From Octopus bimaculoides (taxonomy: Eukaryota), in the NCBI RefSeq assembly GCF_001194135.2, contig NC_068992.1, forward strand, positions 19,447,718-19,484,103: 36,386 nucleotides of DNA. Reading direction: 5' to 3'. Position numbers and translations under genes: made by a program. The notes below the pieces were generated by a model. The model made no database searches, was not told the DNA's origin, and saw only the letters and a program-made list of their open reading frames with translations. Below are positions 11,130 to 20,304 of the stretch, one piece after another. Numbering within the stretch: the first letter of the stretch is position 1; every line of letters starts with the position of its first letter.

Positions 11130-12475
11130 ACTTCACTGATATTTTTTTTTATCATAATAAGAATATAAAGCTATATGCAATCCTACGAGATCTGAACGCA
11201 CAGAGTAAACATTTGTAAGTAGATGAAGCAAATTGTGCTTTATTATTCATTCTGCAGTATTACACGTCACATTTATTGAAGTTTTGAAAGCAGTTATTGA
11301 ATCTAAGTAGTAACAATTGTCTGCTGTTAAAGATAAAATGATGAACAAACGTTGACATTCTACTACAACGACTCCCGTACGACCCATTCTCACCGACATT
11401 CAGTTTTGTTATTTTACATGACGATATGCAAGCGTGGGATACTCTATCACACACACACACACACACAAAATAATGAATATAAAGAAATGAACAAAAGGAA
11501 GGAAAATTAACATTGTTATCTGTAAGCCTAAACTTCTCCCAGAATATTTCCATTTCAAGTAAAACAAAAACTACGTTATGGGTCCATAATATAATTTGAA
11601 AGACACTTAGCTGCTATTTCTAAGAAACTGAGCTAATATGTAGAAGTTTCTTGGTTTGGTAAAAAGAAGTGATTAGATAGAGGATACAGGACGATTATTT
11701 GTAGACTCAAAATATTGCCCTGAATACTCGCAAATATGGGAAAGCCACCAAAATCCTGTAACTGTAGGAGTAATTTTCTCTTGCATGAGAAAATTATTAT
11801 TCCTAGTTTAAATAAAAAAGATACACTCACAGCAGATATCATATCAGGTTATACGTTCAGGCCAAATAGGAGGGATGAATGGTAGATTTATCAAAGACAG
11901 AATAGAAAGAACAGAAGCATCGGTTTTATATTTCTGAACACTCAATTCAAAACCTGCCTTCCATTATTCTGCAGTCGATGAAGGAAGAAATAGTCTATAC
12001 TGGAATTGAACATATCATTCTCTTTCTCTTTTAATTGTATAAGGCTTTCAAAAATCCCGTTTGATTTCTTCCGGAATGAGAACTACCTGAAGTTTACAAA
12101 TATCTGCTGTGTTACCCAAAAGAATACAGAGTTTAATTACAAATTCTCAGCTATGTAGAAGTACCGATTCATCAATCTATCCTGTAGAGAAATGAGTCAA
12201 TTGCAATATCTTTCGATTAAATTTTGTTAATGAAGTAATTTTGTGAGAATATATAATCATAAGGACCAGCGTGCAAATAAACAACTGAAAATACCAATAA
12301 TTTGTTTTCTGTTATTCATTCAATATTTTCCGCTCTATTTCTACGTTATAGCTAATCATCAAATATGCTTCGTTAGCGGTGTAATATCAAAGTATAGTGC
12401 AGCCAAGATATGGAGTCATGATAAGGCAACATGTCATGCATTGAAAGCATACAAGTTATGCGTTTGTGTGCGTGC

Positions 12476-12600
12476 AGGTCGACTTTGCTTTTTATCCTTT
12501 CGGGGTTGATAAATTAAGTACTAGTTAAGTACAGAGTTCGATCTAATCACCTGCCTCCTCCCCCAAAATTTCGGGCCTTGTGCCTAGAGTAGAAAAGAAT
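12476..12600 (+). mobile_element. SINE family A, 5'-truncated young-type copy
   Basis: aggtcgactttgc...aaaatttcgggccttgtgcctagagtagaaaagaat. Confidence 0.9.
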
Positions 12601-12635
12601 CATTATTATTAATCATATTCCAAAATGCATTGGAT

Positions 12636-12793
12636 AAGCAGAACTGTTACCTCACCGGATTAAATGCTTAGCGGCGTTTCGTCCTTCGTCTTTACGTTCA
12701 GAGCCCGATCTCTCCGAGGTCCACTTTGCCGTTCATCCTTCCGGTATCGATAAATTAAGTACCAGTCAAGTACTTGGGTTGATGTAACCGACA
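12636..12793 (+). mobile_element. SINE family A, degenerate copy lacking tail
   Basis: aaatgcttagcggcgtttcgtc...gaggtccactttgcc...gataaattaagtaccag. Confidence 0.75.
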
Positions 12794-13356
12794 AAACTGC
12801 AGAACCTCTGCCTATGGTAAACATGATTATTAATTCCATTTCTTATAATTTCTCCTAGTCTGCTGTTATTTTTTTTTTCGCAGATCGTATAACATTTCTG
12901 TTACATTTGTTAATAATTTAGCAAAAACAAAAATATAAGTCGATAGTACGTGTGAATATTCTATGTTTTATAAGTCATTAGACATGAGATCTTATAAATA
13001 TGGCAATAATCTGTTAAGAATACTTTAATAATATATAATGCATGTCTTCTCTTTTCTCATCTTCAAGGCCGTCTCGTTTCACGGAGAAGCGTTGTTTGTG
13101 TCTGTTTCTGTCTTTCAAATATAGAACATTGACATTTCGAATAAAAAGTAACGTAAGTATTTACATTTTAAGGAGCTTCAAGTATTGCCCTTTTATATAA
13201 GAAATAAAGCGTGCATTTCTGATAGAAATATATTTGTATTAGTTTATTTCACTTTAGGCAAAGCAGTATCAAATGCGAACACAAGTGTGCTGAAGTATCA
13301 TGTTTTTTTGTTTCGGGTAACGACAATGAAATGCAAAGGTGCAATGAATTCATGTG

Positions 13357-13424
<68 letters not shown>
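13357..13424. repeat. (ATT)n microsatellite
   Basis: Directly visible. Confidence 0.98.
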
Positions 13425-13756: not shown

Positions 13757-14336
13757 GTAACAACAACAACAACAACAGCAGCAATGAAAATAAATAACAG
13801 CAAGAAAAAAGATGGCGACGACCAAGACGAGGACGACGACGACCACCACCACGAAGAAGAAGAAGAAGAAGAAGAAGAAGAAGAAGAAGAAGAAGAAGAA
13901 GAAGAAGAAGAAGAAGAAGAACAAGAACAAGAACAAGAACAAGAACAAGAAGAACAAGAACAAGAACAAGAAGAACAAGAACAAGAACAAGAAGAACAAG
14001 AACAAGAACAAGAACAAGAACAAGAAGAAGGAGGAGAAGGAGAAGAAGAAGAAGGAGGAGAAGGAGAAGAAGAAGAAGAAGAAGAAGAACAAGAACAAGA
14101 ACAAGAAGAACAAGAACAAGAACAAGAAGAACAAGAACAAGAAGGAGGAGGAGGAAGAGAAGAAGAAGACGAAGAAGAAGAAGAAGAAGAAGAAGAAGAA
14201 GAAGAAGAAAAAAGAAGAAGAAGAAGAACAAGAAGAACAAGAACAAGAACAAGAAGAATAAGAAGAACAAGAAGAAGTAGAAGAAGTAGAAGGAGAAGTA
14301 GGAGGAGAATAATAATAAGAAGAAGAAAAGAAGAAA
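13757..14336. repeat. Compound trinucleotide/hexanucleotide microsatellite (AAC, GAC, CAC, GAA, GAACAA, GGA, AGT/AAT)
   Basis: Directly visible; source of the poly-E, poly-K, poly-F and poly-L pseudo-ORFs. Confidence 0.97.
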
Positions 14337-14395: not shown

Positions 14396-14497
14396 TATTT
14401 CTTTATTGACCCCAGGGGGCTAAACATAGAGGAGACAAACAAGGACAGACAACGGAATTAAGTCGATAACATCGACCCCAGTGCGTAACTGGTACTT
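14396..14497 (-). mobile_element. SINE family A, 3' fragment with alternative tail
   Basis: Reverse complement of aagtaccagttacgcactggggtcgatgttatcgac plus tail ttgtctgtccttgtttgtctcctctatgtttagcccc; the same tail occurs at about 15270-15335. Confidence 0.85.
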
Positions 14498-14790
14498 GCA
14501 TGTATAATATTAAATGTTAATAGTGGAGATTAACGATAAAGGTAATGTCGGACAAATATTATTTAAAAAAAAAACTTTTCTGGTAGCTTAGATCATTATA
14601 CAATTATACTAAGAGGACATTTTCAAAATATCACTAAAAATAAAAGTGTATAATAAATATATAATTCCAGACGACAACAATGGGAAAACATGTTTTATTG
14701 AAGTATATGCGGAACAAAAATAATATTCAAACTTGTTCGCTTATAATTGGTTGAAGCACTCAATGTCACTTGGCGCTGGCCACCATTCAT

Positions 14791-14961
14791 ATTCTTTTAT
14801 ACCCTAGGCACAAGGCCCGAAATTTTGAGGGAGCCAGTCGATTAGATCGACCCAGTACGAAACTGGTACTTAATTTATCGACACCGAAAAAATGAAAGGC
14901 AAAGTCGACCTCGGCAGAATTTGAACTCAGAACGTAACGACAGACGAAATACCGCTAAGCA
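14791..14961 (-). mobile_element. SINE family A, young-type copy, head missing
   Basis: Reverse complement of core and tail (gcctagggtataaaagaat). Confidence 0.9.
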
Positions 14962-15194
14962 GTTTGTCCCTGATGCCCTCAAAATTGTCCATCAATATCC
15001 GTATGGGAGAAGACAAGACGTCTTCTGGTTCTTCCCGTTATAGCAAATACCAGATATCTTTTGTTTGAATTCCAGCATTTTCTTTTACTTTTTGTGTGTG
15101 TACTTCGTTTGCAAGTTTCCTGGAGTAAACTAGTGTCTTCATACATATATTTTGTTGTTTCGTGAGAGTTATGCCTATAATAAATACACGCCGT

Positions 15195-15534
15195 AAGGCA
15201 GTGACCTGGAAGACACGTTAGCACCCCGGTGCGTAAATGGTACTTAATTTATCGACCCCAATGTAATCGACTTAATACCTTTGTCTGTCCTTGTTTGCCC
15301 CCTCTATGTTTAGCTCCTTGTGGGCAATAAAGAGACAAGAAACGTTAGCACGCCTAGCGAAATGTTTTGCGGTATTTCGTCAGTTTTACGTTCTGAGTTC
15401 AAATTCCAACGAGGTTGACTTTGCCTTTCATCCTTTCGGGGTCGATAAATTAAGTACCAGTAGCATACTGAGGTCGATCAAATTGACTGACCCCCTCCCC
15501 CAATACTTTGGGCCTTTTGCCTAGAGTAGAAAAC
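15195..15534 (+). mobile_element. Dimeric SINE family A copy with internal inversion/deletion (array unit 1)
   Basis: Head 15195-15229, inverted 30-mer 15230-15259, alternative tail, then a second near-complete monomer from about 15338. Identical 16-bp flanks. Confidence 0.85.
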
Positions 15535-15550
15535 AATAAATACACGCCGT

Positions 15551-15753
15551 AATGCGGTCGGCTGGCAGAAACTTTAACTCGCCGGGTAAAATGCTTAGTC
15601 AGTCTTTACGTTCTGAGTTCAAATTGCGCCGAGGTCGACTTTGCCTTTCATCCTTTCGGAGTCGATAAATTCAGCATCAGTTGCGAACTGGGGTCTATCT
15701 AATCGATTGGCCCCTTCCCCAAAATTTCGGGCCTTGTACCAGGAGTATAAAAG
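15551..15753 (+). mobile_element. SINE family A monomer (array unit 2)
   Basis: Head aatgcggtcggctggcagaa, core, young-type tail gccttgtaccaggagtataaaag. Confidence 0.9.
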
Positions 15754-15769
15754 AATAAATACACACCGT

Positions 15770-15921
15770 TTTAAGGTTCAGAGTTCAATTTCCACTGAGG
15801 TTTGACTTTGCCATTCGACATTTTTGGATCGATAAAATAAAGAAGTATCGAGCATTGGGGGTCAATATTATCGACTTAATCATCCTCCGACCATACCGGC
15901 CTTGTTCTAAAATCTAAAATC
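15770..15921 (+). mobile_element. SINE family A, old degenerate copy (array unit 3)
   Basis: gttcagagttcaatttccactgaggtttgactttgcc..., old-type tail cttgttctaaaatctaaaatc. Confidence 0.75.
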
Positions 15922-16099
15922 AATAAATACAGGCCATGGTTCTATTTCATTTCTTGATTTTAATTAGTGAACTTGTTAAAGATTGAACCTATAAACCCAC
16001 TGATTGTTTGATTAATCGTACAGTTAGAATTGTCAATGTCCTTTCTTCACTGTTCTTGACCTTAACAATAATATGACCTCTCTACTCTAGGTTTACTTA

Positions 16100-16670
16100 A
16101 CATATCTTCGCACTCCGAGCTGAACAACGCCTTTGGTATGGAATTTACAAGGCGCTACATATCTTTCGAAAGATGCTATTCATGCCATCTTTGTGGTGCT
16201 TGCTCTTTCTGTTTGTCTGACTTAACTAGGGCCCGCTCTTCATTTTGTGGGCTTTCATTTTGCCCCGTATGCTTTCTCTGCATTAACTGTTTCGAGAACA
16301 GTTTTAGTAACCATTCACTTAAGAGATGTTACTTCCTTCAATATCTACAACTATAAACCGCATTGCTCTTGAACTTGGGATCACAACTATAAACCGTATT
16401 GCTCTTGAACTTGGGATCTGCGGCTGTAAATAATTTTTCTACAGATCCTTCACTATCTTGATTGAAAAGGCTTTTTGACCTCTTAGTTAAATTCCAGCCC
16501 TGAAGGCTGTTCAGCGTTTCCATGGTTCCAGGGCCTCGACTGGAAATGCTTCGAAAAAAACATAACTTACGCGACTTTTCTCGATGGTTATGCACTTAGT
16601 CCTTTTCAGCTTGCATTTTTGTTTGTTTCTGCACCTGTTAAAGAAAACCTTCCAGCGCCCAAGTTGTTCC
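16100..16670 (-). mobile_element. Heavily decayed non-LTR retrotransposon fragment (RT C-terminal region, R2-group/R4-like)
   Basis: Minus-strand frames give GTTWALEGFL*QVQKQTKMQAEKD*VHNHREKSRKLCFFRSISSRGPGTMETL and SEWLLK...QRWHE. These echo the W.LEEL...R.TRK....H......RLY..R..GGRG and EWLLK...W motifs seen more clearly at 31255-31715. Multiple stops. Confidence 0.4.
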
Positions 16671-17534: not shown

Positions 17535-17637
17535 GTGTTTAAAGCCAAATGTTGACGGAAACTGCCATGTTGATATTTTGTTGGAGGTGCTCTGCGAAAC
17601 ATCGTTGGCAAGGCGTAAACGCGATCATGGAATATAG

Positions 17638-18314
17638 GGATCTTTTTTAAAACGGGGGCCACATTTTTCATTAACGAAACACTTTGAAACTTGGAACACT
17701 GGTAGAATGGGTCATATAAAACATCTTTTTCTCTTAGTCTTCTTTAAAAAAAAAGAAATCCATAAATTATTCCATGTTAAAGTTGTCGTATTTCTGTAAT
17801 TTCAACCAATCACTGACGTCCATTCAGCCGATATACATTAAGTGCCGACTACATAAACAAACGATTCTGAAACAATTAANNNNNNNNNNNNNNNNNNNNN
17901 NNNNNNNNNNNNNNNNNNNNNNNNNNNNNNNNNNNNNNNNNNNNNNNNNNNNNNNNNNNNNNNNNNNNNNNNNNNNNNNNNNNNCTCTAACCCTAACCCT
18001 AACCCTAGGGTTACGGTTAGGGTTAGGGTTAGGGTTAGGGTTAAAGCAAATTTAAAATGAAAAAAGCAAATAAAACGAAGAATCGTTTGTTTATGTAGTC
18101 GGCACTTAATGTATATCGACTGAATGGTCGTCAGTGATTGGTTGAAATTATCGAAATAAGACAATTTTTTACATGAAATAAATTCGAATACAAAAATATT
18201 TTTCTGTTCTATAACACAAAATAGATAAGTATACGAAGTTTGAAAGTCTTTCGGTACCAAAAACACTACGTAAAACATTAATGAAAAATGTGGCCCCCGT
18301 TTTAAAAAAGATCC
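17638..18314. mobile_element. Non-autonomous DNA transposon (MITE/foldback) with telomeric-repeat core
   Basis: Perfect 37-bp TIRs ggatcttttttaaaacgggggccacatttttcattaa (17638-17674, 18278-18314). 8-bp TSD gaatatag (17630-17637, 18315-18322). Internal 72-bp inverted repeat with 2 mismatches (17797-17868, 18079-18150). Confidence 0.92.
17985..18043. repeat. Interstitial telomere-type repeats, (CCCTAA)n-CCCTAGGG-(TTAGGG)n
   Basis: Directly visible next to an N gap; centre of symmetry at 18006/18007. Confidence 0.95.
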
Positions 18315-20304
18315 GAATATAGTAATGCTTCAGATAAATGTCGTATATGCGACTGAGAAAAAAAAATCAGAGGCAACATCTGCGTACTCGGAAACAGACA
18401 TACTTATAGTCTCAGACATGCAATATAAGAGCTAAAATTGTTCGATTAATTGACAATACTGATATAACTTATCATATGGGAAATAATAAAAAAACACTAC
18501 TAAATAGCGTAATTATCTGTACGACTATATCTAGCTGTTACTCTTCATTACATGTCATTCTTAATTGCGCAAACCGCTGATTCAAAGAATTTCAAATAAT
18601 AAAAATGAACCATCGACCTTATTTGAAGAATGTGTACGACTACAGTTCTACTCTATTATTCCCTTTCCTAAACCTGTTGGAATAATCTGAGGGATATTTG
18701 ACTGCTAGTTGAAGCCAGTCAAGTGATCAGGTAAAATACCCTCGTTGGTAATACTATTATTTAGGTACTGAATAATAAGTTGATGATAAATATGCATAAC
18801 TATATGATATTTAATCTACAAACAGATCGAGACTCCCAAACGTTGAATCTAAAGAACACAAGCACACATATACATACACACACGCATGTACATACACACC
18901 ATATTCACNNNNNNNNNNNNNNNNNNNNNNNNNNNNNNNNNNNNNNNNNNNNNNNNNNNNNNNNNNNNNNNNNNNNNNNNNNNNNNNNNNNNNNNNNNNN
19001 NNNNNNNNNNNNNNNNNNNNNNNNNNNNNNNNNNNNNNNNNNNNNNNNNNNNNNNNNNNNNNNNNNNNNNNNNNNNNNNNNNNNNNNNNNNNNNNNNNNN
19101 NNNNNNNNNNNNNNNNNNNNNNNNNNNNNNNNNNNNNNNNNNNNNNNNNNNNNNNNNNNNNNNNNNNNNNNNNNNNNNNNNNNNNNNNNNNNNNNNNNNN
19201 NNNNNNNNNNNNNNNNNNNNNNNNNNNNNNNNNNNNNNNNNNNNNNNNNNNNNNNNNNNNNNNNNNNNNNNNNNNNNNNNNNNNNNNNNNNNNNNNNNNN
19301 NNNNNNNNNNNNNNNNNNNNNNNNNNNNNNNNNNNNNNNNNNNNNNNNNNNNNNNNNNNNNNNNNNNNNNNNNATATATACAGGAATATATAATTTTATA
19401 TATATATATATATCATTTTCTTTCATTTTATATTTGATAATGAATGGCGAAAAGCAATTTCGAAGGAATAAAATACTAGATATCTTATCAGAATGACTTG
19501 CACGGAGACCTTGTTATCTTTTGCTGTGGCAAACATTACGCGTCAGATTTCAGATTAAAACGCATGGTTATCACTGGAGGGCTTAATTAGAAATATATCA
19601 AATTGGCTTTAGCTACGACCTGTGAATACAATACGCAATAGTATATACGTGGTAACATATTGATAAGTCCCTTTGATTTGAGATTGTTGCTACTTAAGTA
19701 CATTTATAATACACAGACGTCTTTGTTTAAAAAGCAATGTTATCACAAATGCTTGGTACTCGTTATAAGTTTCTTTCCGGTTTTGTTTCAATTGCACCAC
19801 AAGTAGTGTTCCAACGACGATCACTTTAGCAACGAATTTTATATCAAACGTTGAACGGTTAAAGAAAGAAAATATAAGATAAACAAACTAATGCAAATCA
19901 TATTGAAATGTTATTTATTCAAAGTTTCATAGGAGACAATAGTTTTAAGGCAACCATAAGTAGATATAAGAGTAATAACAATTGTAATACCAATAGCAAC
20001 AATTACAAAGTAGAAGTTAATAAAAAAAAAAAAGAAATGAAATATTCACAATGAAATGCAGTTACAGAGTATGGCTGCCATTATTATTCTCACGATCGGC
20101 TCTTTTTCCTATTTCGTTGATCATTTTATTTGCTGTCTTTAGAAACTTATGTCGAACATCGTACACTAGAACTACGTTACAGAAATGAACAGAGGTTGTG
20201 AGGTAGCATGGCCATGGCTTTTGAGCTGAACTACAGGAACGAATAACGGAACAGAACTGATATTTAGTTAATATATGTTGTTTTGCTTACATACCCGTAA
20301 GCTA

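What the first reader, a model, noticed from the sequence alone, without database searches (positions are those of the whole stretch)
15179..15937. Polarised stack of three SINEs separated by four copies of one 16-bp target site
The repeats are aataaatacacgccgt (15179-15194), an identical copy (15535-15550), aataaatacacaccgt (15754-15769, 1 mismatch) and aataaatacaggccat (15922-15937, 2 mismatches). Each interval holds a different family A SINE in the same orientation. The rightmost is the most decayed and has the old-type tail; the others have young-type tails, and the leftmost is a dimer. The best reading is repeated re-insertion into the regenerated upstream TSD copy, giving a chronological, CRISPR-array-like insertion record at a site-specific hotspot. 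A tandem duplication would not explain different tails and structures in each unit.
Basis: partly seen in the sequence, partly recalled or inferred. Interest (0 to 1): 0.72.

Follow-up and report, generated by a model that had tools for sequence, protein, structure and literature searches.

The report
Three SINEs stacked in one target site
Three different short retrotransposons (SINEs) of an octopus-type genome landed one after another in exactly the same 16-base target, each time copying that target; this is a tidy example of a process already described for other mobile elements, not a new kind of system.

Summary
AATAAATACACGCCGT occurs four times (15179, 15535, 15754, 15922; 0, 0, 1 and 2 mismatches), against 0.05 matches expected by chance. 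Each copy sits exactly between a SINE tail and the next SINE head.

The 16-mer is not part of the SINE. Ten other copies in the window share only its first three bases (AAT), which are the end of the SINE tail. Its length matches the 15-16 bp target-site duplications of solitary copies.

The units are not duplicates of one another:
- u3 is 5'-truncated, heavily decayed, and has a different tail and body signature.
- u1b and u2 are 19% apart, no closer than either is to unlinked copies, and share no excess of private mutations.
- The 16-mers are far more alike than the units they separate.
- u1 is a two-SINE chimera inside one duplication pair. An Octopus vulgaris locus shows the same architecture.

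Best reading: sequential, independent target-primed insertions into one site. The oldest unit is on the right; the order of u1 and u2 is unresolved. The "hotspot" is inferred and "CRISPR-like" is only an analogy. Tandem elements sandwiching a target duplication are already known (SINEU-3, R1, P element, bivalve SINE arrays). I could not reach orthologous loci or do a genome-wide scan.

The parts
15100..15178 (+). Left flank of the original (empty) target; unique sequence, not SINE-derived
   Evidence: Local alignment of the flank plus T1 against long-tail SINE copies scored no better than shuffles, with 162-163 of 500 shuffles reaching the observed score. nhmmer found no SINE hit here.
15179..15194 (+). 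T1: target-site duplication copy 1, AATAAATACACGCCGT
   Evidence: Exact match. It abuts the full-length head of u1a.
15195..15335 (+). u1a: rearranged long-tail SINE. Head 15195-15229, inverted body segment 15230-15259, long tail 15260-15335
   Evidence: The tail is 88% identical to the long-tail copy at 14400-14472(-) (I3). The inverted segment is complementary to the SINE body (I5, I6, D4).
15336..15534 (+). u1b: short-tail ('young-type') SINE lacking about 16 nt of the head, fused directly to the u1a tail with no duplication between them
   Evidence: nhmmer hit 15338-15537, E = 4e-59; alignment. The same dimer architecture sits inside one 15-bp duplication pair in Octopus vulgaris, L001 17208-17566(-).
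15535..15550 (+). T2: duplication copy 2, identical to T1
15551..15753 (+). u2: short-tail SINE with a full 5' end and an internal deletion of about 10 nt
   Evidence: It is 19% from u1b and 17-21% from unlinked young-type copies.
15754..15769 (+). T3: duplication copy 3, AATAAATACACACCGT (one CpG-type change). Its last 4 nt double as microhomology with u3
   Evidence: u3 alignment starts at 15766.
15770..15921 (+). u3: 5'-truncated, heavily decayed SINE of the 'AAATCAAT'-tail subfamily
   Evidence: Model positions 44-201. Tail and GAT(A/G)TTATCGACTTA block are shared with c10891, c1481 and the long-tail type (D8). CpG kept 2/10.
15922..15937 (+). T4: duplication copy 4, AATAAATACAGGCCAT (2 changes), followed by the original right flank
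12470..12828 (+). A second, independent tandem SINE pair (c12469 and c12638) separated by a 21-bp spacer. Related phenomenon, not part of the stack
   Evidence: The spacer holds the upstream duplication of c12638 (ATTATTAAT...TCCA). No third copy lies upstream of c12469.

Best explanation
The stack records at least three separate LINE-driven retrotransposition events (target-primed reverse transcription) that used the same staggered nick pair in one genomic site.

The original site read ...GAGTTATGCCTAT-AATAAATACACGCCGT-GGTTCTATTTC... In each event:
1. The bottom strand was nicked at the left edge of the 16-mer.
2. The SINE RNA 3' end (...GAAU) paired with the AAT of the target and was reverse-transcribed.
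3. The top strand was nicked about 16 nt downstream.
4. Fill-in duplicated the 16-mer.

The upstream copy keeps both the original left flank and the whole 16-mer, so it remains a valid target and was hit again.

Most likely order: u3 first (5'-truncated, joined through CCGT microhomology), then u2 and u1 in an order that is not resolved. u1 is a chimera made in one event: reverse transcriptase copied a short-tail SINE RNA almost to its 5' end, then switched to the 3' end of a long-tail SINE RNA.

Shown:
- four copies of the target;
- exact junctions;
- independence of the units;
- a duplication length typical of the family;
- the age gradient for u3.

Inferred:
- the enzymology;
- use of the upstream copy;
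- template switching;
- that the site is intrinsically hot.
For: 1. There are four 16-mers against 0.05 expected, each exactly at a tail/head junction.

2. Solitary copies of the same SINE have 15-16 bp duplications that also begin with AAT: c7251, c10891 and the L001 dimer.

3. The 16-mer is absent from 10 other copies except for AAT, and the left flank is not SINE-derived.

4. u1b and u2 differ by 0.19, the same as each differs from unlinked copies (0.17-0.23). They share 1 derived state, the same as random pairs, which share 0-2.

5. u3 is 0.35-0.44 from everything and carries the other subfamily's tail and body block.

6. The 16-mers are far more alike than the units. P(0/16 differences | 19% divergence) is about 0.03, and P(<=1/16 | 37%) is about 0.006 (my arithmetic).

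7. 16-mer differences fall from right to left: T3/T4 = 3, T2/T3 = 1, T1/T2 = 0. All three changes are private, and two are CpG-type transitions. u3 is also by far the most decayed unit.

8. The same dimer architecture, with a different fusion point, lies inside one duplication pair in O. vulgaris.

9. Precedent for sequential insertion sandwiching a target duplication: SINEU-3 (PMC4494074) and P, hobo and R1 (PMC5932611).
Against: - No orthologous or polymorphic intermediate (0, 1 or 2 units) could be examined.
- If all the divergence of u1b arose after insertion, the perfect identity of T1 and T2 would be unlikely (about 0.02-0.1). So u1 must be a recent copy of an already diverged source, or SINE divergence is a poor clock here.
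- No partner LINE tail was found, and no tRNA or Rfam signal appears in the heads.
- The recognisable target motif (AAT...) is too weak on its own to explain three exact hits.
- The draft assembly has many N gaps, although none lies in this region.
Confidence: 0.8

Rival explanations
1. Mixed origin. u3 and one younger SINE inserted independently. Unequal exchange between two copies of the 16-mer then duplicated the younger unit, giving the ancestors of u1b and u2. Later rearrangements followed: fusion of u1a, loss of about 16 nt, and a 10-nt deletion in u2.
For: u1b and u2 belong to the same short-tail subfamily. A duplication immediately after insertion would also give a star-like pattern with no shared derived states. 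Exchange between target duplications is the mechanism proposed for bivalve TSD1-(SINE-TSD1)n arrays (PMC11481361).
Against: u1b and u2 differ by 19% while T1 and T2 are identical (P about 0.03). They are no closer to each other than to unlinked copies. Extra events are needed to place a full-length u1a head exactly against T1. The same dimer form arises elsewhere as a single insertion.
Confidence: 0.1
2. Satellite-like tandem duplication of a single [16-mer + SINE] unit, followed by divergence of all three units.
For: Head-to-tail layout with a constant spacer. Such arrays exist in molluscs (PMC11481361).
Against: The units have different tails, different 5' ends and different lengths (340, 203 and 152 bp). 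u3 shares diagnostic blocks with another subfamily. The spacers are much better conserved than the units, with a joint probability of about 2e-4. Tandem Repeats Finder reports no array here.
Confidence: 0.05
3. Assembly artefact: haplotypes or reads from a polymorphic insertion site were concatenated in a draft assembly.
For: The window is a gap-rich draft with many N runs.
Against: There are no Ns within 15100-16000. The flanks are not duplicated. A diploid individual can supply at most two alleles, yet three different units are present. The 16-mers carry graded private substitutions.
Confidence: 0.04

Closest known systems
Sequential ('double') insertion tandems that sandwich a target-site duplication: SINEU-3 in crocodilians (Kojima 2015, PMC4494074); P element, hobo and R1 in Drosophila (McGurk & Barbash 2018, PMC5932611)
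   Same: The layout is element-duplication-element, the junction spacer equals the flanking duplication, and the structure is explained by repeated insertion at a preferred site.
   Different: Here there are three events rather than two. The elements belong to different subfamilies, one is a chimera, and the target is an apparently unique sequence rather than a repeated host element (Mariner-N4_AMi, rDNA) or a known promoter hotspot.
TSD1-(SINE-TSD1)n arrays in the blood clam Scapharca broughtonii (PMC11481361)
   Same: Mollusc SINEs in direct tandem, separated by copies of one target duplication.
   Different: Those arrays consist of highly similar units truncated at the same position and are attributed to unequal recombination. 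Here the units are dissimilar and independently truncated.
Chimeric retrocopies made by reverse-transcriptase template switching (for example the tripartite chimeras in Magnaporthe, PMC2104539, known to me from its title and abstract; U6-L1 chimeras in mammals, from my own knowledge)
   Same: u1 and the O. vulgaris dimer are two RNAs' copies fused head-to-tail inside a single duplication pair, with the 3' partner truncated at a variable 5' point.
   Different: Both partners are SINEs of related families. Template switching is inferred from structure only.
CRISPR arrays
   Same: Only the picture is similar: a short repeat alternating with acquired inserts, possibly added at one end.
   Different: This is eukaryotic DNA. 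The 'repeat' is host target DNA duplicated by insertion, and the 'spacers' are the mobile elements themselves. There is no leader, no cas genes, and no evidence of any function.

Membership tests
LINE-mobilised SINE insertion (target-primed reverse transcription) | Each insert is flanked by direct repeats of the length typical for the family | tested here: met
   The stack has 16-nt repeats. Solitary copies c7251 and c10891 and the L001 dimer have 15-16 nt duplications.
LINE-mobilised SINE insertion (target-primed reverse transcription) | Constant 3' ends with variable 5' truncation | tested here: met
   All units end in ...(A/C/G)AAT. 5' ends fall at model position 1 (u2, u1a), about 16 (u1b) and 44 (u3).
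LINE-mobilised SINE insertion (target-primed reverse transcription) | Head derived from a Pol III gene (tRNA-like, with A and B boxes) | tested here: inconclusive
   ARAGORN and Rfam give no hit. A B-box-like GAGTTCAAATTCC is visible in the consensus, judged by eye only.
LINE-mobilised SINE insertion (target-primed reverse transcription) | 3' tail shared with a partner LINE | tested here: inconclusive
   No significant similarity to the 3' regions of the one LINE family at hand, in the window and in L001/L002. Other LINE families could not be sampled.
Sequential-insertion tandem sandwiching a target duplication | Junction spacers equal the outer duplications in sequence and length | tested here: met
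   T1 = T2; T3 has 1 mismatch and T4 has 2.
Sequential-insertion tandem sandwiching a target duplication | The units are independent copies, not sister duplicates | tested here: met
   u3 belongs to another subfamily. The u1b-u2 distance equals their distance to unlinked copies, and they share no excess of derived states. The sample is only 11 copies.
Sequential-insertion tandem sandwiching a target duplication | Intermediate states (fewer units) exist in relatives or in the population | not testable with these tools
   Flank ORFs are not on record. No coding sequence was found to anchor an orthologue: the SINE ORF search found nothing and 10 of the longer non-repeat ORFs gave no Pfam hit.
SINE-derived tandem array by unequal exchange (satellite-like) | Highly similar units with identical truncation points | tested here: not met
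   Unit lengths are 340, 203 and 152 bp, pairwise distances are 0.19-0.37, and the 5' ends differ.
CRISPR array | Prokaryotic repeat-spacer array with a leader and cas genes; the spacers are derived from invaders and the repeats are not | tested here: not met
   The context is eukaryotic repeat-rich DNA with microsatellites, SINEs and a LINE. Ten of the longer non-repeat ORFs gave no Pfam hit, so no cas-like gene turned up in that limited check. The repeat is duplicated host target.
Chimeric retrocopy by template switching (applies to u1) | Two elements fused with no duplication between them, enclosed by one duplication pair, with a variable fusion point | tested here: met
   In u1, the u1a tail is fused to u1b at about position 16. 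In the O. vulgaris L001 dimer the fusion is at about position 50, inside the pair TATAC(T/A)CATCAACCT. The switching itself is not testable here.

The most novel reading that the evidence does not exclude
A resident SINE, or the duplication/head junction it creates, actively recruits further SINE insertions to its own upstream target copy. On this reading the octopus SINE expansion built ordered, same-orientation stacks genome-wide, and these can be read as local chronological records of subfamily activity. The hints are two tandem SINE groups among about 11 SINE loci in 36 kb, and the very low chance expectation for three exact hits: of order 0.001 triple sites per genome under uniform insertion. 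That figure is my estimate, using the 4.64% SINE content from PMC10925132 and an assumed genome of about 2.3 Gb.
Probability: 0.12. Interest if true: 0.6.

Novelty: new member of a known kind. Interest (0 to 1): 0.3.

Why it matters
It is a clean, internally dated example showing that the retrotransposition machinery behind the octopus SINE expansion re-uses exact nick positions. That implies strongly non-uniform target choice.

If such stacks are common, they offer a cheap way to order SINE subfamilies in time. They would also warn against treating SINE presence or absence at a site as free of homoplasy in cephalopod phylogenetics.

The stack is also the kind of dimer or trimer seed from which SINE-derived tandem repeats can later expand.

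In itself it does not reveal a new mechanism or a function.

Tried and rejected
- **Orthologous or allelic loci:** exact look-ups of the two flank ORFs found nothing.
- **SINE-derived ORF as a handle on more octopus DNA:** no homologue in the protein collection.
- **LINE fragment as a handle:** it gave two O. vulgaris loci with only 4 SINE hits, two of which form one dimer. Three ENA contigs (L011-L013) contain no copy of this SINE.
- **Metagenome scan with the SINE core:** it returned only a 35-45 nt conserved core inside an unrelated SINE-like family, not octopus copies.
- **Is the 16-mer or left flank the tail of an older long-tail SINE?** Rejected; the alignment is no better than shuffles.
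- **Partner LINE by tail homology:** nothing significant.
- **tRNA or Rfam identity of the head:** no hits.
- **Coding exons to anchor synteny:** no Pfam hits in 10 of the longer non-repeat ORFs.
- **Literature search by sequence string:** no paper found. Albertin et al. 2015 is not held.
- **The second tandem pair (12470-12828) as a test of polarity:** no third shared duplication, so it is uninformative.

Full report
**Observation**

The 16-mer AATAAATACACGCCGT is present at 15179 and 15535 (exact), at 15754 (1 mismatch) and at 15922 (2 mismatches). Allowing up to 2 mismatches, these are the only four matches on either strand of the 36-kb window. Dinucleotide shuffles give 0.05 on average and never reached 4.

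A profile built from the SINE copies of the window finds same-strand copies in each interval: 15338-15537, 15567-15756 and 15766-15924. Every 16-mer lies exactly between a SINE 3' end and the next SINE 5' end, or the unique flank.

**Is the 16-mer part of the SINE?**

Eleven copies of the family were aligned, eight of them from elsewhere in the window. The 3' end of the family is ...AGAAAAGAAT in the short 'young' tail and ...GAAATCAAT in the 'old' tail. Beyond AAT the sequences of different copies are unrelated.

So only the first three bases of the 16-mer overlap the element. That is the kind of terminal microhomology expected when a nicked target primes on the 3' end of the RNA. The head consensus starts AAGGCGG..., immediately after the 16-mer in u1 and u2.

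In u3, which starts at model position 44, the last four bases of the 16-mer (CCGT) also match the SINE just before the truncation point. This is typical microhomology at a truncated 5' junction.

The unique left flank plus T1 does not resemble the long-tail SINE end any better than shuffled sequence does. The target is therefore not the remnant of an older element.

**Is 16 nt a plausible target duplication for this family?**

Yes. The solitary copies have duplications of the same length:
- c7251: AATTTCATATCATCT(A).
- c10891: AATATTTCACTCGTAT against AATACTTCACTGATAT.
- A dimer in Octopus vulgaris: TATAC(T/A)CATCAACCT.

All are 15-16 nt, and the two window copies begin with AAT.

**Are the units copies of each other?**

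Pairwise distances:
- u1b-u2: 0.19.
- u1b or u2 to the unlinked young-type copies c7251, c14964r and c12469: 0.17-0.21.
- u3 to everything: 0.35-0.44.

u1b and u2 share a single derived state, as do random pairs of unlinked copies, which share 0-2.

u3 carries the tail AAAATCTAAAATCAAT. This matches 15/20 with c10891 and c1481 but 10/20 with the young consensus. u3 also carries the ...ATTATCGACTTAAT block that the young type lacks (D8).

The structures differ as well. u2 has a complete 5' end with a 10-nt internal deletion. u3 lacks the first about 60 nt. u1 is a chimera.

The spacers are far more alike than the units:
- With 19% divergence between u1b and u2, 16/16 identity of T1 and T2 has probability about 0.03.
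- With 37% divergence between u2 and u3, at most one difference in 16 has probability about 0.006.

A simple tandem duplication of [target + SINE] is therefore rejected. A duplication limited to the u1b/u2 pair is unlikely but not excluded.

**The leftmost unit**

u1 has three parts at its 5' end:
- a 35-nt head (15195-15229);
- a 30-nt body segment in inverted orientation (15230-15259);
- a long-type tail (15260-15335), 88% identical to the long-tail copy at 14400-14472(-).

This is fused with no intervening duplication to a short-tail SINE that starts at about position 16 (15336-15534).

A locus from the O. vulgaris chromosome assembly (L001 17208-17566, minus strand) shows the same architecture: a long-tail SINE fused to a 5'-truncated short-tail SINE, here truncated at about position 50. 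The whole is enclosed by one 15-nt duplication.

Two independent cases with different fusion points suggest a recurrent process. The most economical is template switching of the reverse transcriptase from one SINE RNA to another within a single insertion event.

**Order of events**

All three substitutions among the four 16-mers are private to T3 or T4, and two are CpG-type transitions. Differences between neighbouring copies run 3 (T3/T4), 1 (T2/T3) and 0 (T1/T2).

Unit decay:

| Unit | Consensus CpGs kept | Non-CpG divergence from the young-type consensus |
|---|---|---|
| u3 | 2 of 10 | 32% |
| u2 | 12 of 16 | 9.8% |
| u1b | 10 of 17 | 6.6% |

The u3 figure is measured against a consensus that is not its own subfamily, so it overstates its age.

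Both lines of evidence make u3 the oldest unit, which fits growth at the upstream end. They do not order u1 and u2.

One tension remains. If the divergence of u1b had all arisen after insertion, the identity of T1 and T2, including four intact CpGs, would be improbable (roughly 0.02-0.1). So u1 is probably a recent retrocopy of an already diverged, possibly composite, source, and SINE divergence is not a clean clock here.

**Mechanism**

The anatomy fits target-primed reverse transcription by a LINE endonuclease/reverse transcriptase:
1. A bottom-strand nick at the left edge of the 16-mer.
2. Priming on the ...GAAU end of the RNA.
3. A top-strand nick about 16 nt downstream.
4. Fill-in that duplicates the target.

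After each event the upstream copy keeps the original left flank and the full 16-mer, so the same nick pair can be used again.

The top-strand nick fell at the same position although the sequence to its right changed each time: first unique flank, then the u3 5' end, then the u2 head. This argues for a fixed stagger measured from the first nick.

These steps are inferred. No partner LINE tail was found in the one LINE family available, and the heads give no tRNA or Rfam signal.

**Hotspot?**

The only visible target motif is AAT plus A/T-rich sequence, which is too common to explain three exact hits.

Assume SINEs occupy about 4.64% of the genome (PMC10925132), so roughly half a million copies (my estimate). 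Uniform insertion would then give on the order of 0.001 same-site, same-orientation triples per genome.

So target choice must be strongly uneven, or a resident SINE favours further hits. The window holds a second tandem SINE pair (12470-12828, 21-bp spacer). That pair shows no third shared duplication and cannot test polarity.

**Comparison with what is known**

- Tandem SINEU-3 copies 'sandwiching a TSD', attributed to sequential insertion at a preferred 16-nt site, were described in crocodilians (PMC4494074).
- Double insertion at one target, with the target preserved in the junction, is established for P element, hobo and R1 (PMC5932611).
- TSD1-(SINE-TSD1)n arrays occur in a bivalve. There they consist of near-identical units and are ascribed to unequal exchange (PMC11481361).

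The present stack is a three-event, mixed-subfamily member of the first kind. The CRISPR comparison concerns layout only.

**Limits**

- All family-level statements rest on 11 copies from this window plus the four SINE hits found in O. vulgaris.
- Orthologous loci, population data and a genome-wide census were out of reach.
- The region itself has no assembly gaps, but the window is a gap-rich draft.

Noticed in passing
window 12470-12828: A second same-orientation tandem SINE pair. A 5'-truncated young-type copy is followed after 21 bp by a full-length diverged copy. The spacer contains the upstream duplication of the second copy (ATTATTAAT..TCCA), but no matching copy lies upstream of the first.
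   Followed up: partly
L001 17208-17566 (minus strand; Octopus vulgaris OX597818.1): A dimer of a long-tail SINE fused to a 5'-truncated short-tail SINE inside a single 15-nt duplication (TATAC[T/A]CATCAACCT). It has the same architecture as u1 but a different fusion point.
   Followed up: partly
window 15230-15259: A 30-nt body segment of u1a lies in inverted orientation between its head and its tail (complementary to GGGGTCGATAAATTAAGTACC...). It may be a fold-back or template-switch scar made during reverse transcription.
   Followed up: no
L003-L005, L007, L009 (JGI metagenome contigs): A 35-45 nt core of the octopus SINE (CTTTGCCTTTCATCCTTTCGGGGTCGATAAA) is almost invariant inside an otherwise unrelated SINE-like repeat family on metagenome contigs. 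This suggests a highly conserved central domain shared across taxa. I did not assign the superfamily.
   Followed up: partly
window 17632-18320: A palindrome of about 700 bp (arms 93-95% complementary) centred on an N gap and head-to-head telomere-type repeats, (CCCTAA)3 then (TTAGGG)5, at 17985-18046. It may be a fold-back element or an assembly artefact.
   Followed up: no
window 34975-35300: A 5'-truncated 3' fragment of a LINE ORF2 C-terminus with one in-frame stop, running into an N gap. It is 64% identical to an O. vulgaris 'hypothetical protein' and 73% identical, over 41% of the query, to a small ORF called about 0.9 kb upstream of endonuclease (Exo_endo_phos) and RT (RVT_1) ORFs on ENA contig L011. 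Its 3' region shows no similarity to the SINE tails.
   Followed up: partly
window 13853-14335: A 483-bp (GAAGAA)n microsatellite with 87% matches lies about 850 bp upstream of the stack. A perfect (ATT)22 lies at 13357-13424.
   Followed up: no
window 16347-16418: A 36-bp unit duplicated in tandem (97% identical) lies 400 bp downstream of the stack.
   Followed up: no
window 14790-14975 (minus strand) and 14400-14510 (minus strand): Two further SINE copies in the opposite orientation lie within 800 bp upstream of the stack. They form long imperfect inverted repeats with u1, u2 and u3 (up to 98 nt, 87-88% complementary).
   Followed up: no
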